Positions 1,793 to 64,000 of a DNA stretch of 64,000 bases are shown piece by piece (the stretch's first letter is position 1; the number at the start of each line of letters is the position of its first letter). The DNA is taken from positions 248,001 through 312,000 of IMG/VR virus record IMGVR_UViG_3300050120_000152. One strand, written 5' to 3'. The notes beneath the pieces were generated by a model. It was not told where the DNA came from. It saw nothing but the letters and a program-made list of their open reading frames with translations, and made no database searches. A program made the position numbers and the translations under genes.

Positions 1793-2641
1793 CTACAATA
1801 CATCTTCGAAAAAAGTGCTAAAGGGTTTCATAGTAGATTCAAAGCAATCCCAATCTTCATGATACCACGTATCAAATTCATATATTTCAAATTTGTCAGG
1901 ATACTTTTGATATACTAAGGTAAAAATTAGTTCTTCGGGTAATAAGGTATTTTTTGATAAAATATAATTAACTATGTTATCAAACCCATCTTTTAAGAAA
2001 TTTATTGATGAATATGTTCCACCAAATAAACCGGCAACAATACTTCCGGGCAGGGTTTGCGTCTTTGAGTATAATTCTGGATATGAATGTTGTCTATTCG
2101 AACAATAAAATGTAAATAAATTATTATCACTTAGTTTATCTAGTTTATCAACTAGTTTATGAGTAAATATTAAATCATGTTGATGAGATTGTTCAACAGT
2201 ATCTATTGGATTTGATTTAAATCGTTTTGGTAATATTCCATTATGAGAAATTCCTGCATCAATCCAAAATATTTTATCGTTTGGATATTTTATTGCTTCT
2301 ATTTCCAACCAAAATATTTTTAACCACATTAATTCAACGCAACGATTCGTCCAAATATTATCCAATGCATATATTTCTTTATTAACATGTTTGAGTTGAT
2401 GAATCGCATCATGATATTTCATAGAATTTAATTCAAATACTTCCAAAGATACATTAGTTATGGTATTCTTGAATAAATATTCTTCAATTTCTGCTTTATC
2501 AACGGATGAAGTGTAACATAATATAGGTTCGCCCATTCCCGCTAAACATTTTAATGAAAATAAGTAATGATTATTTCTATTTAATCTTCCGCCATAAGGT
2601 GAATGATGTAATTCATTGTAAATTGCGGTTACAAATTTCAT
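1793..2641 (-). CDS. WlaTC/HtrL-family glycosyltransferase
   Basis: MKFVTAIY, LMWLKIFWL, IFWIDAGI, AGLFGG, PEELIFT; paralogue of the N-terminal domain of 40..1743. Confidence 0.72.
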   Translation of the reverse strand: MKFVTAIYNELHHSPYGGRLNRNNHYLFSLKCLAGMGEPILCYTSSVDKAEIEEYLFKNTITNVSLEVFELNSMKYHDAIHQLKHVNKEIYALDNIWTNRCVELMWLKIFWLEIEAIKYPNDKIFWIDAGISHNGILPKRFKSNPIDTVEQSHQHDLIFTHKLVDKLDKLSDNNLFTFYCSNRQHSYPELYSKTQTLPGSIVAGLFGGTYSSINFLKDGFDNIVNYILSKNTLLPEELIFTLVYQKYPDKFEIYEFDTWYHEDWDCFESTMKPFSTFFEDVL

Positions 2642-4972
2642 TTATGCATCCAAAAATTTATAACGACTGATATTTTCTATGGATGACAGTAATAAATAAT
2701 CATAATCTTTACCGATCTTACCCAAATCCATGTACCATAATAACATACCTTCATAATTGTTGAACATCCATTCAAGATTTTCAAAATTTCCGCAAAATAA
2801 TGCAGTGGTAGGATAATGTTCAATATCAAAATTGAATTTATTTTTGATATATTCTCTATCAAAAATACTGTTCATCTCTTTTTTTGATGTAATGACGATA
2901 CAATCATCGGTTTTTGCAAACTGAGATAATAAATCAACATCACGGGCGATATCATAAGCATATTCACGCTCATTCAATTCATCCAAGTTAACGAATAGAT
3001 GATACTTACTACGGTAATGATTTAATTGAATAACTTCTTTACACCAAAATAGTTTAACATATTTTGAAAATTCTACAGTAGAATTAGATTTAAATTCAAA
3101 ACGCTGTTTTAATCGCTGATCATAATAATGTTGATGTGGCTGAATCAAAAAATATTTAAATGATTTAGATTCAGGGAGTAAACTAACATACTTATGATAA
3201 TTATATTGTGGTATTAATAAGGTAAGGTTTCTATCGTCACGGATCAATTTTTTAATTTGTTCGATATCATAACTTATATCAATATCAGCGGTTTTAAATG
3301 ATAATACATAGATAGAAGTATCAGCTGTTAATTCACCTGCTAATTGATCGTCTTTTATTTTTTTGAATTTATTGCTACCGGGCTTTACTATCAATTTACC
3401 CTCAAAATAAACAGCATCTAATTCCGTATCGCGAAGAATTTTAAATGCGTCAGATAATCGGCTTAATATAGGTTTACCATCTACATTGAACGATGTATTT
3501 AATAGTACCCCATGCCCTGTAAATTTTTCAAGTTCACCTAATAGATCGTAAATCAATGAATTTTGGGCTTTGGTTACGGTTTGTAATCTTGCTGTATTAT
3601 CTTGATGTGTAATGGCAGGTAATCTTTCGCGCCACTCTTCTCTCACAGTAGCCACGAATATCATGTGCCGAGATTCTACACCTTCATCAAATTCAAAATA
3701 CTTAGTAGTATCCTCTAATCTTACCATAGGTGCAAACGGACGATACCATTCACGGTGTTTTACTTTATTATTAAGAATATCTTTCATATCACCTACCGGA
3801 TTACATATGATGCTACGATTACCCAAAGCACGAGAACCGTGTTCAGAGTTACCTTGAATCATACCAACGATATTACCTTCGGCAATAAATTGTGCTAATT
3901 CTTCTAGCTGGATATCTTCATATACTTTTAGATCATGTTCCTGTATATAAGTACCAAACTGGTTCTTATCAATAACAGGCGTGCCACTGTAGGTCAAATC
4001 TACTTGCTGTTCGGGATTCTGATACCATAATAATCCACCGGCTGCTATACCACAGTCATTGACGTTAGGTGGAACGAAAACCTTATTATTACGCAACTTG
4101 AGAAGCTTAGTATTTAATAACACATTGAGCGCACAACCACCAGCCATTGCGATTGGCATATCTGGATATTTGTTTAAATAAGGCTGCGCAAATTTAAAAA
4201 ATTGATTTTCAAATGCTTTCTGCGAAGTAGCTGCAATATCCCAAGCTAGTTGGCCTTCATATCGACTCGATTCCAAATCAAAATCATCAATTCCAATATT
4301 TTTAAATAATTCGGTTAGGGCTTCAAAGCGTACTTCAGCGCCACCTTGCACAGAGTTACCAATATAATTAAATTTTGAATAGAAGTGTTCGAAATGAGGT
4401 ACCCAATGATCACGAATAGTTCCGTAGGAACATAACCCCATAATTTTACCAGCATAGACCAAGTTACCGATGCTTAACGGTTCTTTTTTAATATCCTTAA
4501 GATAATCACATAAAATCATATATGGAAATCCTAAGTCTTGATTGAATTTATCAATCAATCGAATTCCATGTTGACGATTAGCATTATATACGTTGAAGTA
4601 CCCATTATCACCACCGCCGTCGAAAGTGAATATTAATGCTTCTTTATAGGGCGATTGATAAAATGCAGTTGCTGCATGAGCTGTATGATGGTCATAACCC
4701 AATGCTTCCTTGGTATGAAATTTTGGTTTTATGTGTTGAACATAATCTGTCAAATAAACATCCACATCACTTCTATCCGTAGTGGAAAGAAGATATTCCG
4801 TAATTTCATCAAATATTATTTGTGGATGTTTACTTGGCATATAAGTGGTTAAGCCGATATTCTTCGAATTTAACCATCTTTCAACTTCAATTACCCTATA
4901 TTCACCCTTATAATACATTGCTATTGCAGCATTATGTGATCCATAAGCAGATATTATCAATTTATCTTTCAT
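2642..4972 (-). CDS. NodU/CmcH-family O-carbamoyltransferase fused to a C-terminal degenerate HtrL-like domain
   Basis: HHTAHAATAF, DGGGD, AGGCALNV, PPNVNDCG (Kae1-like domain); GSRALGNRSI, KHREWYRPFAP, LLNTSFN (YrdC-like domain); about 230 aa C-terminal extension. Confidence 0.9.
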   Translation of the reverse strand: MKDKLIISAYGSHNAAIAMYYKGEYRVIEVERWLNSKNIGLTTYMPSKHPQIIFDEITEYLLSTTDRSDVDVYLTDYVQHIKPKFHTKEALGYDHHTAHAATAFYQSPYKEALIFTFDGGGDNGYFNVYNANRQHGIRLIDKFNQDLGFPYMILCDYLKDIKKEPLSIGNLVYAGKIMGLCSYGTIRDHWVPHFEHFYSKFNYIGNSVQGGAEVRFEALTELFKNIGIDDFDLESSRYEGQLAWDIAATSQKAFENQFFKFAQPYLNKYPDMPIAMAGGCALNVLLNTKLLKLRNNKVFVPPNVNDCGIAAGGLLWYQNPEQQVDLTYSGTPVIDKNQFGTYIQEHDLKVYEDIQLEELAQFIAEGNIVGMIQGNSEHGSRALGNRSIICNPVGDMKDILNNKVKHREWYRPFAPMVRLEDTTKYFEFDEGVESRHMIFVATVREEWRERLPAITHQDNTARLQTVTKAQNSLIYDLLGELEKFTGHGVLLNTSFNVDGKPILSRLSDAFKILRDTELDAVYFEGKLIVKPGSNKFKKIKDDQLAGELTADTSIYVLSFKTADIDISYDIEQIKKLIRDDRNLTLLIPQYNYHKYVSLLPESKSFKYFLIQPHQHYYDQRLKQRFEFKSNSTVEFSKYVKLFWCKEVIQLNHYRSKYHLFVNLDELNEREYAYDIARDVDLLSQFAKTDDCIVITSKKEMNSIFDREYIKNKFNFDIEHYPTTALFCGNFENLEWMFNNYEGMLLWYMDLGKIGKDYDYLLLSSIENISRYKFLDA

Positions 4973-4994
4973 TTATATATCTTATTATCTTCTA

Positions 4995-5002
4995 TATTTA
5001 TA
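4995..5002 (-). promoter_or_regulatory. T4-type late promoter TATAAATA upstream of the carbamoyltransferase/HtrL operon
   Basis: Exact T4 late consensus about 22 nt upstream of the ATG at 4972, same spacing as at structural genes. Confidence 0.65.
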
Positions 5003-5039
5003 TGCGCTTGTCGTAGATAATTCCATACAATATATCTAT

Positions 5040-5507
5040 TTAAGTCCATAAATATGATCTATAAGTGATGATATTATTTAAATGTGTAGTATCAATTTTC
5101 TTATATTCTTCTAGTAATACAAATGATAAATCATAATCATTTATAGCATGAGCTTCTTCATATTTAATATCACGAATCTTAGCCCAATTATAGGCATCGT
5201 TCATCGTATCAAAGATAAGCTTATTGCGTTCACGGGATAGGTCTTCAGTAGTCACATTATGATCATAATCTGAAGTATTATCATACATTTCATATAGATA
5301 TTTAAGTGATGTTTTTCCATCATCATTTTCCCAAAAATTAATCAAACACGCAAATGTAAGTGTTTCTATGAGCGTATCAATATCTTGAAAATGTTTTGGT
5401 ATTTTTAATGTTAACCATTTTTGTCGAGGATTTACTCTAGTTACTACAATATCGTACCATTGGCGGTTCCACCAATATGAGTTAAATAATAATTTAATAT
5501 TTTTCAT
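5040..5507 (-). CDS. Hypothetical protein
   Basis: 155 aa ORF co-oriented with neighbours; no recognised motif. Confidence 0.6.
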   Translation of the reverse strand: MKNIKLLFNSYWWNRQWYDIVVTRVNPRQKWLTLKIPKHFQDIDTLIETLTFACLINFWENDDGKTSLKYLYEMYDNTSDYDHNVTTEDLSRERNKLIFDTMNDAYNWAKIRDIKYEEAHAINDYDLSFVLLEEYKKIDTTHLNNIITYRSYLWT

Positions 5508-5611
5508 AAGTTATCCATTCTCTATAAATCAATTTTAAATCCTGTTTAGCTACAGAAACGCCACGCTACCAAATCAGCTGTTGAATATATTTCTTTATGT
5601 CGTGGTATTCC

Positions 5612-5641
5612 AAAATAAAAAGGTCAGATATAACTCTGACC
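5612..5641 (-). terminator. Intrinsic terminator after the GT60 gene
   Basis: Minus strand GGTCAGA-GTTATA-TCTGACC followed by TTTTTATTTT. Confidence 0.55.
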
Positions 5642-5673
5642 AGTTTATCATATCAAATCTAATATATCAATTA

Positions 5674-7059
5674 TTAATTTTCAACTATTTTATCAATCTT
5701 CTTCAACCAATCCTTCGATGCGCTGTGTGGCCATACGGTATATGTCTTAGCAATGCGGTCGGGGGGTGACATGTAAATGAAGCGATAGTCGATCCATTCA
5801 CCTTTCAGATATTCCTTAATTTCTGATGCAGATAAATCTTTTCGATATATTTCAGAGCCATACTCATCATGGCACCCGACATAGCAGAAATCATAATCAT
5901 CTATAATCATGACATTACCTTGATCGTCTAAGGTATTAAGATCATTCTTATGAATGCAAACTCTAATATCGTTTGATCGGGAAATAGTGGATTTCCACTC
6001 TTCAGCAGAATCATAAGTCTTATATCCTGTTAACGTTGGTTCAGTACGATCTAAAACGCATTGCTGAACACCGCGATATTTAAATGCTACACCAGAAAAT
6101 TCTTCATAATCCTTTACTGTTCGTACAGTACCAAACCCATATTTACCAAAATCTATCTGAGATTGATCTTCACCATCCATACCAAATAAAATACGATTGC
6201 GCTTATGAGAATTAACATTCTTTTCCCACCAATCTTCAGATATTTTACCTTTCTGTTTTTGTTGGGTTGTATGGTCATCCCACACTTTTACGCGGCCTGC
6301 CCGTGTATATTCATGCCAACATACTACAATATTGGGATGATATAAATCATATCCATGAGTATAAGCTCTTACGCCGATGGATACTTCTTCACCATGGAAG
6401 AAAAATTGTGGGTCATGCTGAACTTCTTCGGCAAATATTCCATCAGCGAATGCAAAATGTGCTGAATAAAATCTTGCATGTATAGGTTTTGTGCGAGTTT
6501 TCCAATCATCTATTGTTGATGGTCTTGTAAAATGGGTGCCTTCGGGAATAAATCTATCAAAATCCATTTTCCACGGTTCCTGAATACGAGCAGCTGGATC
6601 ATTCTGTGGATCAAAAGAAGATACATAAGCCGTCAATAGAGGTTTCGGGCTTACATCTCTTACAGATTCTAGCATGTCAATCAATACAGTATCCCAGCCC
6701 TGTATGAATCTATGATGTGAATCTAATTGTAGGGTATATTTTTCTTTCTTATAATGCTGTTGTATTTTGTTTCTAGCCCAGCATGCCCCATTCGTTTTTA
6801 AATAATGCAAGTCGATTAATTCAATTGTTGCGCCGTTTAAGGTAAGTACGTGTACGTCATCATCTAAAACGGTTTCAGAATTTACTACATCAAATTTTTT
6901 ATCAAGAAAATCTTCAATAGTTTCATCTGCGCCATGTTGCCAGCAAACTACTGCGCGAATTAACTCAGGGTGGTTAGCATTATTGATTAGATCAGTTAAA
7001 GTTGGGATTAACTGGGGATCTCTATAACTAGCGATTTGTACGAAAATTGTGTTATCCAT
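5674..7059 (-). CDS. GT60-family (Skp1-hydroxyproline / polypeptide) alpha-N-acetylglucosaminyltransferase-like protein
   Basis: TIFVQIASYRDPQL, GACWAR, YTLQLDSHHRF (DSH motif), FFFHGEE, RAYTHGYDLYHP, YGFGTVRT. Confidence 0.85.
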   Translation of the reverse strand: MDNTIFVQIASYRDPQLIPTLTDLINNANHPELIRAVVCWQHGADETIEDFLDKKFDVVNSETVLDDDVHVLTLNGATIELIDLHYLKTNGACWARNKIQQHYKKEKYTLQLDSHHRFIQGWDTVLIDMLESVRDVSPKPLLTAYVSSFDPQNDPAARIQEPWKMDFDRFIPEGTHFTRPSTIDDWKTRTKPIHARFYSAHFAFADGIFAEEVQHDPQFFFHGEEVSIGVRAYTHGYDLYHPNIVVCWHEYTRAGRVKVWDDHTTQQKQKGKISEDWWEKNVNSHKRNRILFGMDGEDQSQIDFGKYGFGTVRTVKDYEEFSGVAFKYRGVQQCVLDRTEPTLTGYKTYDSAEEWKSTISRSNDIRVCIHKNDLNTLDDQGNVMIIDDYDFCYVGCHDEYGSEIYRKDLSASEIKEYLKGEWIDYRFIYMSPPDRIAKTYTVWPHSASKDWLKKIDKIVEN

Positions 7060-7088
7060 TTTTATCCTCTATTTTTAATGGGCATAGT

Positions 7089-7124
7089 AAAATAAGAGTG
7101 TCAGATATCTGACACTCTTATTTT
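7089..7124. repeat. Perfect 36-bp palindrome (terminator/operator candidate)
   Basis: AAAATAAGAGTGTCAGATATCTGACACTCTTATTTT equals its own reverse complement. Confidence 0.85.
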
Positions 7125-7134
7125 GTGGGTTGCA

Positions 7135-7593
7135 TTACGATTTATTAGATTTTGGTGGGCGACCAGCTTTACGAGGGGCTGGGGCTGAAGCCTCTGTAGC
7201 ACCATACGGTGGCTGAGCTGCCTGTTGAGACACTGGTTGTCTCATTGGCTGAGCATCTGGATTAAGTCGGGTACGCTGCACTGAACCAGTACGATATAAG
7301 TTAGGTGCCATAATTTCACCAGAGCGAGTTTTTACTTTTACGAACTGGTGGAAATATTCTAATGCATTCACACCATTAGCAAGTGTAATCTGAGCGAATA
7401 AATCCCATGCCTCATAACGAGCAGCGTCACGGCGTGATAAAATCATACCAGCACGATTACGATCAATATCATCAAGATAGTCGGTACGGATAAAGAAAAC
7501 GTCACCGTTTACTTTGTTGTGTTTCAACACAATGACTTCATAGTCGATGCCATTGTTAAAAAGGTCTATAAGTGTTACATGTGGTAATGCCAT
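7135..7593 (-). CDS. Hypothetical phage protein, probably late-expressed
   Basis: 152 aa ORF with AGGAG SD; CATAAATA box at 7625-7632 (-). Confidence 0.7.
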   Translation of the reverse strand: MALPHVTLIDLFNNGIDYEVIVLKHNKVNGDVFFIRTDYLDDIDRNRAGMILSRRDAARYEAWDLFAQITLANGVNALEYFHQFVKVKTRSGEIMAPNLYRTGSVQRTRLNPDAQPMRQPVSQQAAQPPYGATEASAPAPRKAGRPPKSNKS

Positions 7594-7649
7594 ACGACTA
7601 TCTCCTAATTCTTCAAGTCAAAATTATTTATGGAGATAAAAAAATCGTG

Positions 7650-8522: not shown

Positions 8523-8562
8523 TGTTAATCTTCAAATAAATAATGTATAATATCAAGAATAT

Positions 8563-10284: not shown

Positions 10285-10296
10285 AGAAATCCTTGA

Positions 10297-11037: not shown

Positions 11038-11061
11038 TATTCTCGTTAGTTTAGTAGTATA

Positions 11062-55220: not shown

Positions 55221-55250
55221 TTATTGTTCTCTTTTTTAAACTTATATAAA

Positions 55251-55279
55251 AGATTAACATAACGTGAATGATATGTCAA
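55251..55279 (-). promoter_or_regulatory. Sigma70-type promoter for gp55
   Basis: TTGACA-N17-TAATCT with TGn. Confidence 0.7.
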
Positions 55280-55336
55280 ATATTTTATATAAGTTTATGG
55301 ATAAATATCACATATATTTCGGATATTTAGAACAAT

Positions 55337-58249
55337 ATGGCAGATTTAACTCCAGCGCAAGCAAAACAGCTTGGTCAATTATTACAACAAGTGATGGGTG
55401 GTTCAGGATTCGCTGGCTTCGGCGGTAATGCGAAAAGTTCAGCTATGCACAAATATGATAATGATGAAGGTGGCGGCGTTGACTTCACTAAAATGAAGAA
55501 TATTATTAAAAATAATAGTGATCTTGCCACACAAATGGGCGCAACCTATAAAGACCTTAATGCGAGAGGTAAAACTGTAGCAGGATTGTATAAAACATTA
55601 GAGGAAGCTACTAGATCACAGGGTAATATTCAGCGTAAAGCTGCTCAAAGTATGGCCGATATGATCGAAAAAACCAACGATGCCGCCAAAAAGTTAGAAC
55701 AAATTACTAGAATAGCAAGTAAAGCCAGTGAGAATCTATCTAGAAGTGAAAAAGTATTTGCTCAGCTTGATAAGATTGCAGCCGAACGCAAAAAATTAAA
55801 AACGATTATAACTAAACGTAGAAATAAGGGAGAATCGACTACTAGTTATGAGAATGAATTAAACACACATAACAAAGAGAATGCAACTAAGGAAAAAAAT
55901 CTTAGAGGGGAAGCCGATAAAATAATTAATAGTTTCAAATTATTAAATAAAGTTACAGGAACTCTTTCGGCTGGACAGGTTAAACAGTTATCAAGATTTG
56001 CAAAAATGACTGCTAATCAACGTAACAAGTCTGGTGTATTTGATACGGTAAGAAAAAGTGTAGAAGGTTTAGATGGGTCTACTAAAATTGCGGCTAATCA
56101 TATAATTACTAATTCGAAGGTTGCTGGCGAATCGTTGAAAGCTGCTGGACAAAGTGCAGTTGCATTTGGAAAAGTTTTGTTAACTATGATTCCCGGCATA
56201 TATGCCGGGCTTAAAGCCAATCAGAAATATAATGTAAAATCTTATAATCCTTTAGAATCTGGCTTAAGGGGTATGAGTGAGCAAGAGCGCGCTCAAGCTA
56301 TAGGCGAAAACCGAATTGGGTTGCGCGGCCTCGGCAGTGGAAATGAGGAGAAGGGGTTTACTAATACTAAGGCATTACAAGAAACTGCGCATATTTTTGG
56401 TGTGACTGGCGCAGCAGCATTGCAAAAAGCATTTGATTATCAGAAAATATCAATGGGGATGGGAGTTTCTACTAGTAATGTCAAAGCACAGCAACAACAA
56501 ATGTCGCAGATGCACGCTATGTCTAAAGCCGTTGGCAGCACTGACGAAGAGTTACAAGATTTTTATGCAACATTGAAAGATACCGGACAGCTTGCTGGTA
56601 TGAGTGCAAACATGTCTGAAAAGAATGATAAAGATCGCTCACAAGCAATAAATCAAGAAATTTTTCAACGTTTAGCATTGAATAAAGCTATGGGCATCAG
56701 TGTAGATATGTTAAAACGTCAGGCACAAGATGCCGTAAATTCAAGATATGCCGGATTAGCCAATTCTATAAAATCTGGATTGGGTGAACAGTTAAAAATT
56801 AAACAATATAATAAAGATAATCCTAATGATCAGATAAATCCGGCAGATAGCAAAAGAATGCAACAAATTAAAGCTGCTGGCGTTGGAGGAACTTCCCCAG
56901 AGGATCAGGCTTGGTATAATGCCAATGAATTAAAGATAGGCACATTCAGAACGGCTAAATTGGCCAAGGATCAGCGGGATTATCCACACGGTGGTAAAGA
57001 ATTTACGAAAGATTTAGTACAAAATCAGTATATGGGTGCACTTAACCCAAACCTTGCACAGGAAGATAAAGATTTTGCTAATGCTCAACAACAAGGTCAA
57101 GCACAAGGTAAAGATGCAGTACAAGGAGATTTCAGTAAAGTCATTCAGGATGCATCAACAAGTTTAAATGGCCCTACGGGGTTAACTGGTGCGGCAATGG
57201 ATGCAGCTCAAGCATTGGAAGGGTTAGCAAAATCTCCGCTCGGCGGTAGTGGTGGGGTGGCATCCTATATCGAAGGTGCTATTGCCGCTAAAGTTGGTGG
57301 CATGGTCACTAAATGGGGGGCCGGACAAATAGCTAAAAAATTAGGAACTAATGCGCTAGGAAAGGCTGCGGCAGATGTTGCAGAACATGGTGTTGCTGGT
57401 GCTCTATTGAAACATGCTGCCGGATATGTAGCCAGTAAAACTCCTGAGTCTATATTGGGTAAGGTTGCAGGGGGTGTTGCTGGTAAATTTGCAACCGGAG
57501 CTGCAGGGAATGTAGCTAGAGCAGGATTATTTAGTGGAATTGGTCGAGGATTACTTAAAACTGGGCTACGTGGGGGCGCTGGTGCATTGGGCGCATATGG
57601 GATAAATTCATTATTTGGTGGTGCAGATACTCTTTCAGAAGGTAATAAAGATTTAGGTTCCCGTATGTTGCGTGGCGGTGATGAAGTAGCTGACTGGGCT
57701 ATGGCAAGCGGTTGGAAACCCGCACAAGGAGTAGGATTAGCCTATAAAGGTGGGGTACGTACTGGTAATGCCATCCATAATTTTGGCTCCAAGTTTGACG
57801 GATATAAGGATTTTACTGATACGCTATTTGGATCAACTGTTGGTGGCGTTCAAGCGTTAATGGGTGGTGATAAGAGCGGATGGCATCAAGCAGAAAAGAG
57901 TGCTAATGAGTTAGCAGGAAAGCTTGGTCTTGGATATAATGATGATTCATTTCATTATAATGGTAAATCAGTAGATTCAGGAATATCTATTCCGGCTGAT
58001 GTAGCAGCATCAAAAATTAGTGATCTTACCAAACAATCGCTTGATGATGCCAATGATCCGGTAGCATTAGCTCGTGATCAAGAAACTATAAAAGTATTAA
58101 AAGCTATTGCCAAAGCTACTACCGAATCAAATGATAGAGATAAATCTAAAGATTTAACCCCAGAAACCCCTGATAATGTTAAAGGCTCGGGTTTCGCAGG
58201 TTATAATGGTCACTTGAATCAAGTCCATGCTGGCGCGTTCACTCGCTGA
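55337..58249 (+). CDS. Tape-measure-like protein
   Basis: 970 aa, helical/coiled-coil N-half, Gly/Ala-rich amphipathic C-half; GATAAATA at 55300-55307. Confidence 0.55.
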   Translation: MADLTPAQAKQLGQLLQQVMGGSGFAGFGGNAKSSAMHKYDNDEGGGVDFTKMKNIIKNNSDLATQMGATYKDLNARGKTVAGLYKTLEEATRSQGNIQRKAAQSMADMIEKTNDAAKKLEQITRIASKASENLSRSEKVFAQLDKIAAERKKLKTIITKRRNKGESTTSYENELNTHNKENATKEKNLRGEADKIINSFKLLNKVTGTLSAGQVKQLSRFAKMTANQRNKSGVFDTVRKSVEGLDGSTKIAANHIITNSKVAGESLKAAGQSAVAFGKVLLTMIPGIYAGLKANQKYNVKSYNPLESGLRGMSEQERAQAIGENRIGLRGLGSGNEEKGFTNTKALQETAHIFGVTGAAALQKAFDYQKISMGMGVSTSNVKAQQQQMSQMHAMSKAVGSTDEELQDFYATLKDTGQLAGMSANMSEKNDKDRSQAINQEIFQRLALNKAMGISVDMLKRQAQDAVNSRYAGLANSIKSGLGEQLKIKQYNKDNPNDQINPADSKRMQQIKAAGVGGTSPEDQAWYNANELKIGTFRTAKLAKDQRDYPHGGKEFTKDLVQNQYMGALNPNLAQEDKDFANAQQQGQAQGKDAVQGDFSKVIQDASTSLNGPTGLTGAAMDAAQALEGLAKSPLGGSGGVASYIEGAIAAKVGGMVTKWGAGQIAKKLGTNALGKAAADVAEHGVAGALLKHAAGYVASKTPESILGKVAGGVAGKFATGAAGNVARAGLFSGIGRGLLKTGLRGGAGALGAYGINSLFGGADTLSEGNKDLGSRMLRGGDEVADWAMASGWKPAQGVGLAYKGGVRTGNAIHNFGSKFDGYKDFTDTLFGSTVGGVQALMGGDKSGWHQAEKSANELAGKLGLGYNDDSFHYNGKSVDSGISIPADVAASKISDLTKQSLDDANDPVALARDQETIKVLKAIAKATTESNDRDKSKDLTPETPDNVKGSGFAGYNGHLNQVHAGAFTR

Positions 58250-58267
58250 CTATAGATACAATTAACA

Positions 58268-58275
58268 TATAAATA
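58268..58275 (+). promoter_or_regulatory. Late promoter TATAAATA (portal)
   Basis: Exact consensus 22 nt before ATG. Confidence 0.75.
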
Positions 58276-58297
58276 CTAAAATCGAAGAGATTGTACC

Positions 58298-60025
58298 ATG
58301 GCTAATCCAGAAAATGGAAAATTAACTAAAATATACAAAATCATAACACCGGAATCGCCGAGAACCAGCGTCACGGATAGTCAAGATTTAGCCGGTAATT
58401 ATGGGTTGTATGGTAATTATAGTTTTATGAACAAGTTGATGCAAGGCAGTTCTATGCGCTTGCAACGATATCGCGAATACGACATGATGGATGAAGATAC
58501 TGATGTGAGTAGAGCATTGGATATCATTGCCGAAGAAATTGTAGGTAATAACCCAAAATCAGATTTACCATTAATATTAAAAATTACTGCTGGCGAAGAA
58601 CAGCAAGTTAATTCTCGTACTGTAGTCACATTAAAGGCAGCATTAAATACATGGTGTAATATCCATAGATGGAATCGTAGACTTTATACTACTGTAAGAA
58701 ATACAATTAAATATGGTGATACATTCTTTTTTAGAAATGAAAAACCAAACCTACCTAATAAATATGTCAATCCTAAACACGTTATAGGTGCAGTTGTAAC
58801 AAAAACCGATGTTAATGATGTTAAAGGATGGCAAATTCAAACTGATTATGACAAAGCATCCCAAAATATAAACTTTGCCATTACAGGAAATTCTTCACAA
58901 ACTTATAATGTGGAAAACTACACCCCTGAAGAAGTTATACGATTTGGTTTGCATGATGATATGAGTGATGAAGCCCCATTTAGTCAATCTATTCTTAAAG
59001 CAGCATACAAAATTTTCAAACAAAAGCAGATGCTGGAAGATTCTTTATTAATTTATAGAATACAACGCGCACCAGAAAAACGAGTATTCAAGCTTGAAAT
59101 TGGTAATACACCACCACATCTAAAATCACAAATTTTAGAAAATGCTAAGAATGAAATCAAGCAACGTAAAATACCAACTCCTTATGGTGGTGGTAATCAG
59201 GTAGAATCCATTTATTCACCAATGTCAATGAATGAAGATTTCTTTTTTACAATGAAGAATGGTGTTGGGTCTACTGTAGAAACCTTACCGGGTGGTCAGA
59301 ATCTTGGTCAGCTTGACGATCTTAATTATTTCTATAGCAAAATGTGGAGAGCTTTAAGAATCCCTCAATCCTATATGGACAATGGAGTCGAAGGTGGCAC
59401 GCCATTCAATGATGGTAAGGTTGGCATAGCCTATCAACAGGAAATCAAATTTACGCTTTATATTGAGTCATTACAAGTACATTTTGAAGATATTCTTGAT
59501 AGAGAATTTAAAAAATTCTTACGTGATCAAAAAATAAATATTGATCCAACTATTTTTAAAGTTGTATTACCTGAACCATCAAATTTCAAAAAGTCTCGTG
59601 ATAATGAAATTGACCAAACATTAGTAGCTTTAGCAACATCTGCTGGTGCTATTGATTGGTTATCTAAGAGATATATCGCTATACATTATCTACAGATGAC
59701 TAAGGCCGATCTTCTTATTAATGAACGACAGAAAGCTGAAGAATTGGGTCTTGACCCTAATGATACTATTAAGAATATGGCTAAAATATATTCACCTGAG
59801 AATGCCGATTCTGGTGGTTATGATGGTGGTATGACTGGTGGTAGTGGAGGATCATCAGATTTAAGTGGTATGCCAGCTGATGATATAGGCGGGGATGATG
59901 ATGGTGCTGATACTGGCGAAGCTGGTACAGGTGAAGAAAATGCTAAAGGTAGTGCTAATAATGGTGCAGAAACAGGTGGAAATGCTTCAAAAGGACAAAA
60001 TCCTCCTAAGAATGGCAAAACATAA
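58298..60025 (+). CDS. Portal protein (gp20-like)
   Basis: YREYD.M, LEDSLLIYRIQRAPEKRVF, MNEDFF, VETLPGGQNLG.LDD..YF, AL.IP.S. Confidence 0.95.
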   Translation: MANPENGKLTKIYKIITPESPRTSVTDSQDLAGNYGLYGNYSFMNKLMQGSSMRLQRYREYDMMDEDTDVSRALDIIAEEIVGNNPKSDLPLILKITAGEEQQVNSRTVVTLKAALNTWCNIHRWNRRLYTTVRNTIKYGDTFFFRNEKPNLPNKYVNPKHVIGAVVTKTDVNDVKGWQIQTDYDKASQNINFAITGNSSQTYNVENYTPEEVIRFGLHDDMSDEAPFSQSILKAAYKIFKQKQMLEDSLLIYRIQRAPEKRVFKLEIGNTPPHLKSQILENAKNEIKQRKIPTPYGGGNQVESIYSPMSMNEDFFFTMKNGVGSTVETLPGGQNLGQLDDLNYFYSKMWRALRIPQSYMDNGVEGGTPFNDGKVGIAYQQEIKFTLYIESLQVHFEDILDREFKKFLRDQKINIDPTIFKVVLPEPSNFKKSRDNEIDQTLVALATSAGAIDWLSKRYIAIHYLQMTKADLLINERQKAEELGLDPNDTIKNMAKIYSPENADSGGYDGGMTGGSGGSSDLSGMPADDIGGDDDGADTGEAGTGEENAKGSANNGAETGGNASKGQNPPKNGKT

Positions 60026-60054
60026 TAAATAATAATTACCGAAAGGATGGATTG

Positions 60055-60342
60055 ATGGAATCGAAAGAATATTTAAAGCAAGTAGTTAATGCATTGGTTA
60101 ACGGCAATGAAACCGAAGCCAAAGAGATTCATCATGCCTATGTTGAGCAGAAATCTCAAGAATTACTTAAAGAAGATAAAATTTCTTTAAAAGGTGCTGT
60201 AGATTTTATCAAAAAAACAAAAGCTGCTATTGCAGCATGTGATCCAAAAGACATTGAAAAATTAAAAGAATTACGTCATACATTATCATCGGCTGAAGAA
60301 CAGTTTGAGAATGATGAAAATGAAAATGAGTTTGATAAATGA
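60055..60342 (+). CDS. Prohead core/scaffold-like small protein
   Basis: Between portal and protease; N-terminal helix similar to 60814..61365. Confidence 0.55.
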   Translation: MESKEYLKQVVNALVNGNETEAKEIHHAYVEQKSQELLKEDKISLKGAVDFIKKTKAAIAACDPKDIEKLKELRHTLSSAEEQFENDENENEFDK

Positions 60343-60608
60343 AAATTCAAGATGTGCTATCCGAGAAGTTTGATCCGAGTGATAGAGACTATCACAAACA
60401 GACGGTGGCAGTGAAAAATAGTTCAACTGCAAAATTACCAAATGCATTTGTAAATAAACATATTACCCCGGTAGCATATCGTAATGGTAATTCTGTGAAT
60501 GATGAAATTGGATTAGATTTTACCAGCCACGATTACACCAAGGATGAACCCATTGCCAAGGATGGCAAACCTAAAAAGAAAAAAGTAAAGGAAGATAGTG
60601 AGTCATGA
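60339..60608 (+). CDS. Small head-associated protein
   Basis: MKIQDVLSE N-terminus; ATGA coupling. Confidence 0.5.
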   Translation: MKIQDVLSEKFDPSDRDYHKQTVAVKNSSTAKLPNAFVNKHITPVAYRNGNSVNDEIGLDFTSHDYTKDEPIAKDGKPKKKKVKEDSES

Positions 60609-60799
60609 AAATTGGAAGTTTTAAAGAATATAGAAATTCAATAAAAGGTTCACCATATCATTACTTGGAAACCAATACAACAGAATTTGAACAAGCAGAA
60701 ATAAAGGATGGGTTAGCACCATCCGAAGACGAAAAAGATATCGAAAATAAGAAATCCTTATTACAATATTTATTATATGCTAATGCAGCCAACCAATAA
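60605..60799 (+). CDS. Small head-associated protein
   Basis: MKIGSFKEY N-terminus; ATGA coupling. Confidence 0.45.
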   Translation: MKIGSFKEYRNSIKGSPYHYLETNTTEFEQAEIKDGLAPSEDEKDIENKKSLLQYLLYANAANQ

Positions 60800-60813
60800 T
60801 TGAGGAATACAAT

Positions 60814-61365
60814 ATGAGTATGCAAGACGATCTAAAAACAGTATTTGATAGTGTAGTCAAGAAAGATGATGATGCAGCTTCTGCTGCATTCAGCGCCTAT
60901 ATTGATCAAAAATCTGTAGAAGTATTAAAAGGTTTAACTGAAGCAAAATTTAAATCACCCATTCAAATCAAGGGTAATGATGTATTCGTCAACGGTAAAA
61001 AGGTGGGTGGCGTCAAGCATAATGCTGAGGAAAATAAGGGATTGGAATATACCCCTACAGATGGTGAAAAACAGAAGTTTCCTAAGTTAGGCGATCTATA
61101 TACTCATTTGGGTAAAGAACATAAATTGAGTGAAAGCGCAACCGATTTGAAAGGTATTGTTAAAGATTATGAATCTGAAGTACAATCATTACCAAACCGT
61201 CCTAAGTTGTCTAAACTTAAAGCATTTAGTTCAGCTAAGGGCGCAGGTTTGGATGCCGATGGTGATCATGATGGCGAAGAAGATGGTGCAAGTGCTGATG
61301 CTAAGCGTGAAGCGCCTATCAAGAAATTAGTTGCAAAAGTAGACGCAGAGAAGAAGGTTAAGTAA
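60814..61365 (+). CDS. Prohead core protein-like
   Basis: GAGGA SD; LTE/LSE potential protease sites; directly upstream of protease. Confidence 0.55.
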   Translation: MSMQDDLKTVFDSVVKKDDDAASAAFSAYIDQKSVEVLKGLTEAKFKSPIQIKGNDVFVNGKKVGGVKHNAEENKGLEYTPTDGEKQKFPKLGDLYTHLGKEHKLSESATDLKGIVKDYESEVQSLPNRPKLSKLKAFSSAKGAGLDADGDHDGEEDGASADAKREAPIKKLVAKVDAEKKVK

Positions 61366-61994
61366 TGGAACTGTTGATTGAACACTATACCAGTTCTGAA
61401 GCTAACGTTATAACCGAATCAGCTAACGGCGGGAAGGATGTATATTTGAGTGGTAGATTTTTATCTGGAAATTTAAAGAACCGTAATGGTAGAATTTATC
61501 CAGTGAACGAAATCATGCAAGCTGTTATGTCTTTGAATGAAGGTATCCGCGAACATGGTTCTATTGCTGGTGAATTAGATCATCCAGCTAATCGTTTAAC
61601 CACAGAACTTAAATATGCTTCCCATGTTATTACTGAAATTCGTATGGATGGTGATAATGCTACTGGTAAGATGAAAATCATGAATACTCCTAATGGATTA
61701 GTTGTAAAAGAATTAATCCGTAACGGTTTTCGTCCTGATGTATCATCTCGCGGTGCTGGTAATGTTGGTTCTGATGGTGTAGTTGAAGGATTCCTGATTC
61801 AAACTATTGACATAGTTAACCAAGCATCTGGCATTGGATGTTCACCAGTATCTGTTTATGAATCATTGGAAGATAATAAATTTGGTCGTAGAGCAGTATC
61901 ATTGGCAGAAGCAGTATTAGAAGACCAAGCTGCACAAAAATATCTTATTGCCGAAGTGAAGCGATTCATGGATGCATTAAAATATAATAAGTAA
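61365..61994 (+). CDS. Prohead core protease (gp21-like)
   Basis: KNRNGRIYP, GELDHP, SHVIT, TPNG, VSSRG.G, DIV. Confidence 0.93.
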   Translation: MELLIEHYTSSEANVITESANGGKDVYLSGRFLSGNLKNRNGRIYPVNEIMQAVMSLNEGIREHGSIAGELDHPANRLTTELKYASHVITEIRMDGDNATGKMKIMNTPNGLVVKELIRNGFRPDVSSRGAGNVGSDGVVEGFLIQTIDIVNQASGIGCSPVSVYESLEDNKFGRRAVSLAEAVLEDQAAQKYLIAEVKRFMDALKYNK

Positions 61995-62015
61995 TACAAA
62001 AATGACAGACAAAAT

Positions 62016-62037
62016 AAAGCCCCTTTCGGGGCTTTTT
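62016..62037. terminator. Bidirectional terminator after gp21
   Basis: AAAGCCCC-TTTC-GGGGCTTTTT. Confidence 0.85.
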
Positions 62038-62038
62038 G

Positions 62039-62386
62039 TTATTCTATTTCCATAGATTCATCAGGCTCGCGTTCCATACCTTGAGAACCTTGTTGTCTGA
62101 AATTATCTCTAGCCTGACCCAAGTTTCTACGATCAACACTACCACCAAGCTTATTAGCATAATTTAATGCCATAGTACCACGTTCTGTAATATCTAAAGC
62201 GATATCATCAACTAATCCCAAAGCAGCTAAACCTTCAACTGCATCATGTGCTTGAGGGGAAGCATCATCAAAATTAAATTTATTTGATGCAATCTTTCTT
62301 AAAATACCAACTTGCAAGGGCGATAACTGTTTATATGCTAATACTGCACCACCACCATCTTCTGTTAAAACGTTTTGAATTTTCAT
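62039..62386 (-). CDS. Small winged-helix-like protein with capsid-targeting-like N-terminus
   Basis: MKIQNVLTE; LSPLQ..IL...L..LGLV.....ITERG. Confidence 0.5.
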   Translation of the reverse strand: MKIQNVLTEDGGGAVLAYKQLSPLQVGILRKIASNKFNFDDASPQAHDAVEGLAALGLVDDIALDITERGTMALNYANKLGGSVDRRNLGQARDNFRQQGSQGMEREPDESMEIE

Positions 62387-62420
62387 AATACTCTCCGATG
62401 TTATTATTTATTTGAGTTTG

Positions 62421-62485
62421 ATGATAAGATGAACATATTTTAATGTCAAGCACTTCTTGTAAAATGAAATTAATTATGTTAGACT
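62421..62485. promoter_or_regulatory. Divergent sigma70-type promoters
   Basis: Minus: TTGACA-N17-TATCAT (62449-62421); plus: TTGTAA-N17-TAGACT with TGn (62457-62485). Confidence 0.55.
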
Positions 62486-62554
62486 TGATAAGTTAATTAT
62501 GAAGTCGAAATATGTCTACAATATTAAAAATAAAAATAACAGCGAGGGAATTGG

Positions 62555-63121
62555 ATGACTTGTATAGTAGCTTTAAAAGATAAAAATAAAGTATATATGG
62601 CTGGTGATTCTCTTGGTACTGACCCAGTAACCTTACAGAAAACCGTGAGATTAGATGAAAAAGTTTTTATAAAAACTGATATGTTATTCGGATTTACTTC
62701 ATCATTTAGAATGGGACAAATTATACGTTATGTATTTGATATTCCCGAGCGAATGGAAGCTATTGGTGATATGGAATATCTTGTAGCACATTTTATACCA
62801 GCCTTGATAAAATGTTATGAAGACCAAGGATTCCTTAAAAAACCTGATGATAATGAATATCAAGGGGGGCATTTTTTGTTAGGATATCGTGGTAATTTTT
62901 ATGATGTTCTTGATGATTTTCAGATAGGCATTCCAACATTAAATTATGAAGCCATAGGATGTGGTGAAGATTATGCCAAAGGTTCAATGTATACCACAGA
63001 AACGTTGGAAGATAAACTAGATAAAAAACTAACCCCACAAAAACGCCTTACCATGGCATTAGATGCAGCATGCGAGCATTCTGCGGGCGTAGCAGCACCC
63101 TATATCATATTGAGTATATAA
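62555..63121 (+). CDS. HslV/proteasome-beta-like N-terminal-Thr protease
   Basis: MTCIVA...VYMAGDS, K, AIGCG..YA.G. Confidence 0.75.
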   Translation: MTCIVALKDKNKVYMAGDSLGTDPVTLQKTVRLDEKVFIKTDMLFGFTSSFRMGQIIRYVFDIPERMEAIGDMEYLVAHFIPALIKCYEDQGFLKKPDDNEYQGGHFLLGYRGNFYDVLDDFQIGIPTLNYEAIGCGEDYAKGSMYTTETLEDKLDKKLTPQKRLTMALDAACEHSAGVAAPYIILSI

Positions 63122-63657
63122 TGAATAAATTTACTGAAGTATTCTTGACAGAATCAAAAAAACCATCCCGAGTATTTAAAGCTCCTGTAAAAACGATTCT
63201 TCCGAAAGATGGAGTTTCTATATTTTTAGCTGGTTCTATTGAAATGGGCAAAGCCGAAGATTGGCAAACTAAAGTTACCAAATTACTTACAAGTCATTAC
63301 GAAAATATTTACATTTTCAATCCTCGTAGAGATGACTGGTCATCTGACTGGAAACAAGAAATAGAAAATAAACAATTTAACGAACAAGTTACATGGGAAC
63401 TATCCCATATTGAATCATCTACAATTATGTTAGTTCATTTTGATCCAAAAACCCAATCTCCCATTACTCTAGCTGAGTTGGGAATTGCTTGTGGTAAATT
63501 CCCCGATAAAGTGATAGTATCGTGCCCTGAAGGCTTTTTTCGTAAGGGTAATGTGGATATCATATGTCATCGTTACGGGGTTACACAGATTGAATCATTA
63601 GATGATGAATTAATTGAAGCTGTAGCAAAAAAATCAAACAAATTAAAGGAGAAATGA
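63121..63657 (+). CDS. Nucleoside 2-deoxyribosyltransferase-like protein
   Basis: IFLAGSI, WQ, NPRR, QV.WEL, SPITL.ELG, RKGNV; start set to ATG 63121. Confidence 0.8.
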   Translation: MNKFTEVFLTESKKPSRVFKAPVKTILPKDGVSIFLAGSIEMGKAEDWQTKVTKLLTSHYENIYIFNPRRDDWSSDWKQEIENKQFNEQVTWELSHIESSTIMLVHFDPKTQSPITLAELGIACGKFPDKVIVSCPEGFFRKGNVDIICHRYGVTQIESLDDELIEAVAKKSNKLKEK

Positions 63658-63658
63658 A

Positions 63659-63844
63659 ATTCCAATCCATATCTACCACTGCGATACAGAATCGTGTGAA
63701 GCACCAGAAGAAGAACGTTTAGTAAAATTTAGTAATGCTGAAGAACAGATATGTAAAGAGTGTGGTGCAATATTACGTATTATTCCTTCTTTTGGCACTT
63801 TTCATTTGAAAGGTCATTGGTGGAAAACGATGAAATCTTATTAA
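63659..63844 (+). CDS. FmdB-family zinc-ribbon protein with ATT start codon
   Basis: (M)PIHIYHCDTESC...ICKECG...FHLKGHWW; AAGGAG 7 nt upstream of ATT; in-frame stop upstream. Confidence 0.7.
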   Translation: MPIHIYHCDTESCEAPEEERLVKFSNAEEQICKECGAILRIIPSFGTFHLKGHWWKTMKSY

Positions 63845-63846
63845 TT

Positions 63847-64000
63847 ATGACGCGAGTATTTGCATTTGATGTTGATGAAACTTTAGACATATCGAATGGC
63901 CCAATTGGAGTAAAAGTAATTGAGCTTTTATATAATGCTGGTCATATTGTAGGTATTTGTGGAAATTTCCCACAATTTATACGTGAAGTACCTAATTGGA
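63847..64000 (+). CDS. HAD-superfamily hydrolase, truncated by window end
   Basis: MTRVFAFDVDETL (DxDxT motif I). Confidence 0.65.
   Translation, partial: MTRVFAFDVDETLDISNGPIGVKVIELLYNAGHIVGICGNFPQFIREVPNW

What the first reader, a model, noticed from the sequence alone, without database searches (positions are those of the whole stretch)
2046..63903. Systematic avoidance of CCWGG and GGWCC by synonymous recoding
All 29 Pro-Gly pairs I checked in the main ORFs use CCC/CCG-GGN (e.g. near 2046, 11403, 26187, 45705, 59288). All of about 18 Gly-Pro pairs checked use GGC/GGG-CCN. Elsewhere this AT-rich genome prefers CCA/CCT and GGT/GGA. I found no CCAGG, CCTGG, GGACC or GGTCC by eye. Inference: selection against EcoRII/Dcm-type and AvaII/SinI-type sites. 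This hints at the host's restriction systems and suggests cytosines are not globally hypermodified, which favours a non-DNA substrate for the glyco cluster.
Basis: partly seen in the sequence, partly recalled or inferred. Interest (0 to 1): 0.6.

Follow-up and report, generated by a model that had tools for sequence, protein, structure and literature searches.

The report
Jumbo phage purged of restriction sites
This uncultured 340-kb peat phage has removed almost every copy of CCWGG, GGWCC and about twenty other short restriction-enzyme target words from its DNA, mostly by swapping synonymous codons; this is a very broad case of a known way for phages to escape bacterial restriction enzymes.

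Summary
The window has 0 CCWGG and 0 GGWCC, against 35.6±4.0 and 21.2±3.2 under a synonymous-codon shuffle. The whole 340,344-bp genome has one of each, against 148±9 and 111±8. All 29 Pro-Gly pairs in the window use CCC/CCG and all 17 Gly-Pro pairs use GGC/GGG (88/88 and 74/74 genome-wide), although 77% of Pro and 76% of Gly codons end in A/T.

These two words are only part of the pattern. At least 22 motifs are nearly eliminated (26 sites seen, 948 expected). They include RGATCY, CACGTG, CGATCG, CTCGAG, GTCGAC, GAGCTC, ACCGGT and TGGCCA.

The genome is a complete uncultured jumbo myovirus from peat, in a clade sister to Xanthomonas/Stenotrophomonas phages XacN1, Xoo-sp13 and CM1. A core of avoided sites is shared by this whole group despite saturated synonymous divergence, so it is actively maintained. 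CCWGG avoidance is old in the group. GGWCC avoidance is unique to this phage.

No DNA methyltransferase or base-modification gene was found. The glycosyltransferase is a GlcNAc-type family, and XacN1's homologous cluster accompanies virion glycoproteins.

Verdict: real restriction-site avoidance and a new member of a known kind. The host is unidentified.

The parts
1..64000 (.). Whole window: no CCWGG and no GGWCC on either strand. Also no CACCTC, CACGTG, CGATCG, GCTAGC, CGTACG, CTCGAG, GTCGAC, GAGCTC, ACCGGT, TCCGGA, GGTCTC, CCTNAGG or CACNNNNGTG.
   Evidence: Synonymous shuffle expects 35.6±4.0 CCWGG and 21.2±3.2 GGWCC.
2046..2050 (-). Example of a recoded Pro-Gly pair (CCC-GGA in ORF 1793..2641, minus strand).
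11402..11406 (-). Recoded Pro-Gly pair (CCG-GGT) in the DNA polymerase gene 11062..13809.
26186..26190 (-). Recoded Pro-Gly pair (CCG-GGC) in the 3,499-aa virion structural protein gene 25522..36021.
45705..45709 (+). Recoded Pro-Gly pair (CCC-GGC) in ORF 45498..46484.
59288..59292 (+). Recoded Pro-Gly pair (CCG-GGT) in the portal gene 58298..60025.
7016..7022 (.). One of the few residual sites of other avoided motifs in the window: GGATCTC, which is an RGATCY and a GATCTC together, inside the glycosyltransferase gene. The other residual RGATCY in the window is at 14280.
40..7059 (-). The 'glyco cluster': HtrL_YibB-like protein (40..1743), ORF 1793..2641, NodU/CmcH-type carbamoyltransferase (2642..4972) and PF11397 GlcNAc-type glycosyltransferase (5674..7059). 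It is syntenic with XacN1 ORF330-334 and Xoo-sp13 genes 300-304.
   Evidence: XacN1 glycoproteins in PMC5852040.

Best explanation
The phage DNA enters its hosts unmodified and is exposed to many orthodox Type II restriction enzymes. Selection has therefore removed the enzymes' target words from the genome. For CCWGG and GGWCC, removal in coding DNA works in three ways: the middle W is switched to S at Pro-Gly and Gly-Pro codon pairs (CCW-GG to CCS-GG, GGW-CC to GGS-CC); NCC codons are never placed before Trp/AGG, nor ACC/TCC after NGG; and CAG/CTG/GAC/GTC are not used in the offending flank context. Non-coding DNA is purged too, and Pro-Gly, Gly-Pro and Trp-Pro dipeptides are themselves under-used. 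The two words belong to a set of at least 22 purged motifs. A core of that set is shared by the whole XacN1-like jumbo-phage group and is actively maintained. CCWGG avoidance is old in the group. GGWCC avoidance was gained on this phage's own branch, which implies a GGWCC-cutting (AvaII/SinI-type) system in its particular host range. Shown: the depletion, its specificity, the recoding route, its distribution on the tree, and the lack of methyltransferase or modification genes. Inferred: that restriction enzymes are the selective agent, that the DNA is chemically unmodified, and that the host is a relative of the Xanthomonadales.
For: - Depletion: genome CCWGG 1 vs 148±9 and GGWCC 1 vs 111±8 under a synonymous shuffle; window 0 vs 35.6 and 0 vs 21.2.
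- Word specificity: in 4x4 flank tables only the palindromic hexamer is missing, e.g. ACCGGT 1/44.6 vs ACCGGA 33/32. GATC, CCGG and GGCC themselves are at 0.91-0.96.
- 22 motifs total 26 observed vs 948 expected.
- Codon route: 88/88 Pro-Gly and 74/74 Gly-Pro pairs use the rare S-ending codons. NCC before TGG is 0/320 vs about 40 expected, and similar results hold for the other frames.
- Outside called ORFs: 5 observed vs 173.5 expected.
- Orthologous test: of 106 aligned GGWCC sites in relatives, 50 are the same amino acids with synonymous codons in this phage. The rate of amino-acid change is no higher than at control words.
- CCSGG is 1.64x and GGSCC 1.33x enriched.
- Phylogenetic pattern: seven ingroup phages share the core. 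The non-avoiders RsoM2USA and L040 fall outside.
- Synonymous sites are saturated (0.35-0.39 identical vs 0.31-0.34 expected), so shared absence requires ongoing selection.
- No PF00145, PF01555, PF02086, PF02384, PF05869, PF00303 or PF01702 in six-frame searches, with positive controls ringing.
- Literature: site avoidance is typical of non-temperate dsDNA phages and orthodox Type II systems (PMC6286503). AvaII is GGWCC-specific and XorII of X. oryzae is CGATCG-specific (PMC4390886). Restriction-modification content varies between X. oryzae strains (PMC4853030).
Against: - The host is unknown, so no cognate enzyme has been shown.
- The phage is uncultured, so its DNA chemistry has not been measured.
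- Some purged words (GAGATC, CACCTC, GAGCAC) are non-palindromic and I cannot assign an enzyme to them. Published surveys find avoidance rare for Type IIG/III sites.
- The phage is 35% GC, while known hosts of its cultured relatives are, from my own knowledge, about 65% GC. The host inference therefore rests on phylogeny and on shared avoided words only.
- My gene calls come from a simple longest-ORF caller, not a trained gene finder.
Confidence: 0.82

Rival explanations
1. The phage avoids the targets of host methyltransferases rather than of host endonucleases. Being marked at CCWGG or GGWCC in one host would expose progeny to methylation-dependent (Type IV) nucleases in the next host.
For: The sequence signature would be identical to that seen. 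XacN1 is reported to have a wide host range (PMC5852040), which would favour such a cost of carrying marks between hosts.
Against: No positive evidence. It would need methyltransferases for at least 22 specificities, each paired with Type IV pressure. Published surveys tie avoidance to orthodox Type II endonuclease sites.
Confidence: 0.07
2. The phage encodes its own site-specific nucleases without a partner methylase, to shred host DNA, and must therefore keep its own genome free of their targets.
For: The near-absolute purge and the clade-wide conservation of some unassigned words (GAGATC, CACCTC) would fit a phage-intrinsic cause for those particular words.
Against: More than 20 different specificities would be needed. 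No EcoRII-C or SinI family match was found in the genome, although the controls for those searches did not ring, so this is weak. The mosaic of gains and losses among sister phages looks like changing external pressure.
Confidence: 0.05
3. Neutral compositional or mutational bias, for example methylation-driven C-to-T decay or a general shortage of GC-rich words in an AT-rich genome.
For: The genome is AT-rich (34.7% GC), and all strongly avoided words contain G/C.
Against: Composition- and codon-aware nulls are exceeded by 14-16 sd. Equally GC-rich palindromes (CCATGG, GCATGC, TGCGCA, GTGCAC, GCGCGC) are at 1.1-1.3x. Deamination products are not enriched, whereas CCSGG and GGSCC are. A 43% GC island is just as clean.
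Confidence: 0.01

Closest known systems
Restriction-site avoidance in non-temperate dsDNA phages (Rusinov et al. 2018, PMC6286503)
   Same: Near-complete elimination of short, mostly palindromic Type II recognition words from a lytic-type dsDNA phage genome that has no protecting methylase.
   Different: The breadth (at least 22 motifs, about 920 sites removed from 340 kb). The persistence of a shared core across a clade whose synonymous sites are saturated. A visible imprint on dipeptide usage. The host's enzymes are not known here, whereas that survey used known host-enzyme pairs.
Xanthomonas phage XacN1 and kin (Xoo-sp13, Stenotrophomonas CM1)
   Same: Sister group on the DNA polymerase tree. 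Same glycosyltransferase/carbamoyltransferase module beside the polymerase. Many tRNAs. The same core of missing words, and CCWGG is absent in XacN1 and CM1.
   Different: Polymerase only 42-47% identical. Those phages keep GGWCC (65/90, 31/44, 38/53). Xoo-sp13 keeps about half of its CCWGG. XacN1 additionally lacks GATC entirely in the 43 kb examined. Site avoidance is not mentioned in the XacN1 paper.
T-even phage strategy: hydroxymethyl/glucosyl-cytosine DNA
   Same: T4-like replication and virion gene core. The goal is the same: escape from restriction.
   Different: The strategy is the opposite. No ThyA-family hydroxymethylase is present, and the glycosyltransferase is a PF11397 GlcNAc-type family rather than a recognised DNA glucosyltransferase family. 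A hypermodified genome would not be under selection to lose sites.
T7/T3 and EcoRII (from my own knowledge, not tested here)
   Same: EcoRII-type enzymes need two sites to cut, so a genome with one or very few CCWGG sites is refractory. This phage keeps exactly one CCWGG.
   Different: T7 has a small genome with few sites. Here about 150-275 expected sites were removed from a jumbo genome.

Membership tests
Restriction-site avoidance (anti-restriction by loss of recognition sites) | Recognition word significantly under-represented against a composition- and codon-aware null | tested here: met
   z = -16 and -14; no shuffle comes near the observed count.
Restriction-site avoidance (anti-restriction by loss of recognition sites) | Depletion is specific to the exact word, not to its neighbours or sub-words | tested here: met
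   CCSGG and GGSCC enriched; CCGG, GGCC and GATC near expectation; only the palindromic hexamer is missing in the 4x4 tables.
Restriction-site avoidance (anti-restriction by loss of recognition sites) | The words are known specificities of restriction-modification systems | tested here: met
   AvaII = GGWCC and XorII = CGATCG in PMC4390886. CCWGG appears as a bacterial methylation motif in the papers listed. EcoRII/Dcm = CCWGG and the other enzyme names are from my own knowledge.
Restriction-site avoidance (anti-restriction by loss of recognition sites) | The host encodes the cognate endonucleases | not testable with these tools
   Host unknown.
Restriction-site avoidance (anti-restriction by loss of recognition sites) | The phage lacks its own protective methylase or base modification for these sites | tested here: met
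   Searches found no match, with controls ringing. One search found only a generic 183-aa SAM-methyltransferase. The MT-A70 control did not ring.
T4-type cytosine hypermodification | dCMP hydroxymethylase (ThyA family) | tested here: not met
   no PF00303 in six frames. ThyX is present instead.
T4-type cytosine hypermodification | DNA-directed glucosyltransferase | tested here: inconclusive
   The glycosyltransferase in the cluster is PF11397 (GlcNAc-type), with GT25 and HtrL-like neighbours. The T4 alpha/beta-glucosyltransferase families were not searched directly.
XacN1-like jumbo myoviruses | Phylogenetic placement and conserved synteny with XacN1 | tested here: met
   the peat clade joins CM1/XacN1/Xoo-sp13 with 89/94 support; same gene order around the polymerase and glyco cluster; 39 tRNAs.

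The most novel reading that the evidence does not exclude
The set of purged words acts as a heritable but evolving barcode of the restriction repertoire that a jumbo-phage lineage meets. A core has been held for longer than synonymous saturation across the XacN1-like group, with datable gains (GGWCC in this phage; CTGCAG and CAGCTG in G001 and G003) and losses (CCWGG relaxed in Xoo-sp13). The pressure is strong enough to reshape protein sequence: Pro-Gly is halved, and Trp-Pro, Gly-Pro and Pro-Gly are the three rarest dipeptides. If so, such barcodes could be used to assign hosts to uncultured jumbo phages. The unusually low GC of this lineage could itself be an adaptation that lowers the load of the GC-rich sites cut by enzymes of high-GC hosts.
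Probability: 0.35. Interest if true: 0.7.

Novelty: new member of a known kind. Interest (0 to 1): 0.5.

Why it matters
The finding gives a concrete, testable prediction about the defences of an unknown peat bacterium: it should carry CCWGG- and GGWCC-specific systems plus about twenty others. It shows that a whole group of jumbo phages, including isolates considered for plant-disease biocontrol, relies on site loss rather than DNA modification. It also dates one acquisition of avoidance (GGWCC) on a phylogeny and provides the orthologous codon changes that achieved it. For annotation, it argues that the conserved glycosyltransferase/carbamoyltransferase module decorates proteins rather than DNA.

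Tried and rejected
- Megablast of the giant gene against the phage collection found no match.
I fetched the relatives' contigs instead.
- The metagenome scan gave no relative closer than 59% polymerase identity, so the GGWCC gain cannot be dated more finely.
- Host identification failed.
- The planned test of EcoRII/SinI family prevalence in Xanthomonadales could therefore not be run.
- Searches of the phage genome for EcoRII-C, RE_SinI and MT-A70 were empty, but their control genomes did not ring either, so they say little.
- The region holding the only CCAGG and the only AGATCT gave no Rfam or PHROG match.
- PADLOC on ten window ORFs gave only one weak UzuA match.
- TAG recoding was considered because of a tRNA with a CTA anticodon. 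It was rejected because reading through TAG adds only 2-28 codons and lengthens long frames less than a TGA control. No alternative code was used anywhere.
- Deamination decay was rejected.
- General depletion of GC-rich words was rejected.
- The large protein searches were not needed and were not used.
Full report
**1. The observation**

An exact scan of the 64-kb window finds no CCAGG, CCTGG, GGACC or GGTCC. The central-S variants are present (38 CCSGG, 21 GGSCC). Dinucleotide-preserving shuffles expect 45.3±6.5 and 39.9±6.1 matches counted on both strands.

The window is bases 248,001-312,000 of a single 340,344-bp contig with 34.7% GC. IMG/VR classes it as a complete virus record with terminal repeats. 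The repeat is a 40-bp overlap.

In the whole genome there is one CCAGG (genome 195,542) and one GGACC (133,613). First- and second-order Markov models expect 255-275 and 205-218.

No gene finder was installed, so I called 434 genes with a greedy longest-ORF procedure (87% coding). I then shuffled synonymous codons within each gene 200 times. This null is conservative because it keeps the proteins and the already-biased codon usage.
- Genome: CCWGG 148±9 expected vs 1 observed (z = -16); GGWCC 111±8 vs 1 (z = -14).
- Window alone: 35.6±4.0 (minimum 25) and 21.2±3.2 (minimum 14), both vs 0.

- Window: 29/29 Pro-Gly pairs use CCC or CCG, and 17/17 Gly-Pro pairs use GGC or GGG.
- Genome: 88/88 and 74/74.
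- Overall codon usage: Pro is 77% CCA/CCT and Gly is 75.5% GGT/GGA.
- The five example coordinates are all in-frame Pro-Gly pairs.

**2. All frames, non-coding DNA and direct evidence of recoding**

The other two reading frames are equally clean.
- None of 320 Ala/Pro/Ser/Thr codons before Trp ends in CC (about 40 expected).
- None of 141 Thr/Ser codons after Trp is ACC or TCC (18.5 expected).
- CAG, CTG, GAC and GTC are absent or nearly absent in the flank contexts that would create a site: 1/64, 0/237, 0/50 and 0/109.

Outside the called ORFs (44 kb), CCWGG is 0 vs 36 expected and GGWCC is 1 vs 30.5. So the purge is not only a matter of codon choice.

Relative to the synonymous null, CCSGG is 1.64-fold and GGSCC 1.33-fold enriched. 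The cytosine-deamination products CTWGG/CCWAG are at 0.88-0.98. The sites were therefore moved to their central-S variants. They were not eroded by methylation-driven mutation.

The most direct test uses relatives that still carry GGWCC. Of 106 aligned coding positions with GGWCC in a relative, this phage has the same amino acids encoded by different codons at 50 (for example GGT-CCA to GGC-CCA, TGG-ACC to TGG-ACT). It has a different amino acid at 53 and a gap at 3. The conserved fraction is no lower than at control words (38-49%).

**3. The two words are part of a much larger set**

Ranking all 4-6-mers against the synonymous null gives a clearly bimodal picture. The following are at or near zero (observed/expected).
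- RGATCY 4/193
- CACCTC 0/51
- GAGATC 1/60
- GAGCAC 1/35
- CACGTG 0/27
- CGATCG 0/22
- GCTAGC 0/21
- CGTACG 0/18
- CTCGAG 0/14
- GTCGAC 0/14
- GAGCTC 0/13
- CCGCGG 0/9
- ACCGGT 1/45
- GACGTC 1/16
- AGGCCT 1/16
- TCCGGA 2/31
- GCCGGC 1/13
- GGCGCC 1/10
- TGGCCA 7/50
- GGTCTC 4/31
- CCTNAGG 0/21 and CACNNNNGTG 0/17

Partly depleted are AGTACT (0.22), ATCGAT (0.26) and GAGGAG (0.17).

By contrast, GATC, CCGG and GGCC are at 0.91-0.96. CCATGG, GCATGC, TGCGCA, GTGCAC and GCGCGC are at 1.1-1.3. All AT-only palindromes are near 1.

In 4x4 flank tables only the palindromic member is missing (ACCGGT 1/44.6 vs ACCGGA 33/32).

Summed over 22 motifs, 26 sites remain where 948 are expected.

A 26-kb island of higher GC (43%; genome 166-192.5 kb) is just as clean: CCWGG 0 vs 42 and GGWCC 0 vs 28.

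GGAGG/CCTCC is also low. I attribute this to the well-known avoidance of internal Shine-Dalgarno-like sequences (my own knowledge).

**4. What the genome is**

The window carries a T4-like core:
- DNA polymerase, baseplate wedge and hub, and tail tube;
- a 3,499-aa virion protein;
- a helicase, an SbcCD-like nuclease and the portal.

The genome has 39 tRNAs. Its DNA occurs in two peat metagenomes from different studies. In the second one a low-depth contig covers the lone CCAGG without any difference.

The closest isolates are Xanthomonas phages XacN1 and Xoo-sp13 (polymerase 46-47% identical) and Stenotrophomonas phages CM1 and RAS14 (42%). Closer uncultured relatives are G001-G003 at 56-59% identity.

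On a polymerase tree the four uncultured phages form a clade (100/99). That clade is sister to CM1+(XacN1, Xoo-sp13) (100/100), and the two groups join with 89/94 support. A more distant T4-like contig (L040) and Ralstonia phage RsoM2USA lie outside.

**5. Distribution of avoidance on the tree**

- All seven ingroup phages lack RGATCY, GAGATC, CGATCG, CTCGAG, GTCGAC, GAGCTC, TGGCCA and GACGTC.
- CCWGG is absent from six of them: 1/275, 0/244, 0/48, 1/182, XacN1 0/69 and CM1 0/51. It is only half-depleted in Xoo-sp13 (24/50).
- GGWCC is avoided only in this phage (1/205). The others have 112/180, 28/42, 81/148, 65/90, 31/44 and 38/53.
- Other words vary by lineage. CTGCAG and CAGCTG are absent in G001 and G003. 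ACCGGT, AGGCCT and CCTNAGG are present only in G001. AGTACT is absent in G003. GATC is wholly absent from the XacN1 locus (0/155).
- RsoM2USA and L040 show no avoidance: CCWGG 35/42 and 12/13, RGATCY 45/61 and 5/8.

At four-fold sites of conserved residues, this phage and its nearest relatives share the third base in 35-39% of cases, against 31-34% expected from codon usage alone. Synonymous sites are therefore saturated. The shared absences cannot be passive inheritance, so each lineage must still be under selection.

**6. Mechanism**

The best reading is classical restriction-site avoidance. Unmodified phage DNA is exposed to orthodox Type II enzymes of the host range, and any genome carrying a site is cut.

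This is a known strategy. It is most pronounced in non-temperate dsDNA phages and for orthodox Type II sites (PMC6286503).

Six-frame searches of the genome found no member of these families, with control genomes ringing: C5-methyltransferase, N4/N6-methyltransferase, Dam D12, N6_Mtase, phage Dam, ThyA/dCMP-hydroxymethylase and TGT/DpdA. Motif-guided candidates yielded only a small generic SAM-methyltransferase. ThyX is present.

The single remaining CCWGG would, from my own knowledge, be harmless to EcoRII-type enzymes, which need two sites.

The avoided core matches enzymes first found in the host genera of the cultured relatives. From my own knowledge these include XhoI CTCGAG, XhoII RGATCY, XorI CTGCAG, XamI/XciI GTCGAC and PmlI CACGTG. 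XorII = CGATCG and AvaII = GGWCC are documented in PMC4390886. Strain-to-strain variation of restriction-modification content in X. oryzae is documented in PMC4853030.

I therefore infer, but have not shown, a host related to the Xanthomonadales. That host's population would additionally carry a GGWCC-specific system.

**7. Amino-acid-level imprint**

Trp-Pro (TGG-CCA would make TGGCCA), Gly-Pro and Pro-Gly are the three most depleted of 396 dipeptides in this phage, with O/E of 0.35, 0.35 and 0.42.
- Pro-Gly is 0.44-0.49 in the three closest relatives.
- It is 0.69-0.84 in XacN1, Xoo-sp13 and CM1.
- It is 0.98-1.04 in the three non-avoiding controls.

The Gly-Pro baseline is noisy (0.36-0.82), and the control samples are small (about 25 expected pairs each). 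This point is suggestive rather than settled. If it holds, the purge is mostly but not purely synonymous.

**8. The glyco cluster**

The cluster contains:
- an HtrL_YibB-like protein;
- a NodU/CmcH-type carbamoyltransferase;
- a PF11397 glycosyltransferase (E = 1e-76).

Pfam describes PF11397 only as a GlcNAc glycosyltransferase. From my own knowledge it is the family of the Skp1 hydroxyproline GlcNAc-transferase, which acts on protein.

A GT25 gene lies just upstream of the window. The module is syntenic with XacN1 ORF330-334 and with Xoo-sp13.

The XacN1 authors detected at least two virion glycoproteins and attributed them to the phage glycosyltransferases. They also mapped the genome with BssHII, NaeI and SpeI, so the DNA can be cut (PMC5852040).

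**9. Rivals**

- Avoiding methylase targets to escape methylation-dependent nucleases would leave the same signature and cannot be separated from the main explanation here.
- Self-encoded nucleases are unlikely given more than 20 specificities and the mosaic among sister phages. They cannot be excluded for the unassigned clade-wide words GAGATC and CACCTC.
- Compositional or mutational bias is rejected by the word specificity, by the enriched S-variants and by the clean GC-rich island.

**10. Novelty and verdict**

Restriction-site avoidance is a known kind of adaptation. I found no report of it for XacN1-like phages. The XacN1 paper does not mention it, and no paper in the library pairs 'restriction site avoidance' with 'jumbo phage'.

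This is a new and unusually broad member of a known kind, with a useful comparative structure. The host and the DNA chemistry remain to be measured.

No alternative genetic code was used.

Noticed in passing
Genome 166,000-192,500 (outside the window; G000:C1): A 26-kb island of 40-45% GC in a genome of about 33% GC. It is full of small genes with GC3 around 0.5. It is still free of CCWGG (0 vs 42) and GGWCC (0 vs 28). Its origin and function are unknown.
   Followed up: partly
Genome 195,352-195,546 (L030:2352-2546): The only AGATCT and the only CCAGG of the genome lie 190 bp apart, in or next to a dubious hydrophobic ORF. There is no Rfam or PHROG match. The CCAGG is confirmed in a second peat sample. 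The only GGACC (133,613) is intergenic.
   Followed up: partly
Genome complement 152,451-152,540: A well-folded 90-nt tRNA with anticodon CTA (amber-suppressor type) and a long variable arm. TAG ends only 22 of 434 genes and none of the 85 genes longer than 300 aa. Reading through TAG does not lengthen genes, so there is no evidence of recoding.
   Followed up: yes
L028 (Xanthomonas phage XacN1, record 208,786-251,428): XacN1 has no GATC at all in 43 kb (0 vs 155 expected). It also lacks CCATGG, GCATGC and GTGCAC, so its avoidance panel is even wider than this phage's. This is not mentioned in its genome paper.
   Followed up: partly
Whole genome and relatives G001-G003: Non-palindromic words GAGATC, CACCTC and GAGCAC, and more weakly GACATC, CAGCTC and CTCGAA, are purged on both strands in a lineage-dependent way. 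I could not assign enzymes to them.
   Followed up: partly
Whole proteome (434 called genes): Trp-Pro, Gly-Pro and Pro-Gly are the three rarest dipeptides (O/E 0.35-0.42). Pro-Gly is about 1.0 in non-avoiding phages. This suggests that restriction pressure reaches into protein sequence.
   Followed up: partly
window:25522-36021 (-): A 3,499-aa ORF matching a virion structural protein family (phrog_10938). It is the counterpart of the giant genes next to the glyco cluster in XacN1 and Xoo-sp13.
   Followed up: no
window:50532-51398 (+): A weak match (E = 1.7e-6, 93 residues) of a 288-aa ORF to the PADLOC model UzuA. Its significance is unknown.
   Followed up: no
L044 (Escherichia phage UE-S1, Asteriusvirus): This E. 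coli jumbo phage does not avoid CCWGG (27/28) or GGWCC (17/18). It does lack CTGCAG, CAGCTG and GCATGC and has only 1 CCATGG vs 8 expected in 43 kb, which suggests a different avoidance panel.
   Followed up: no
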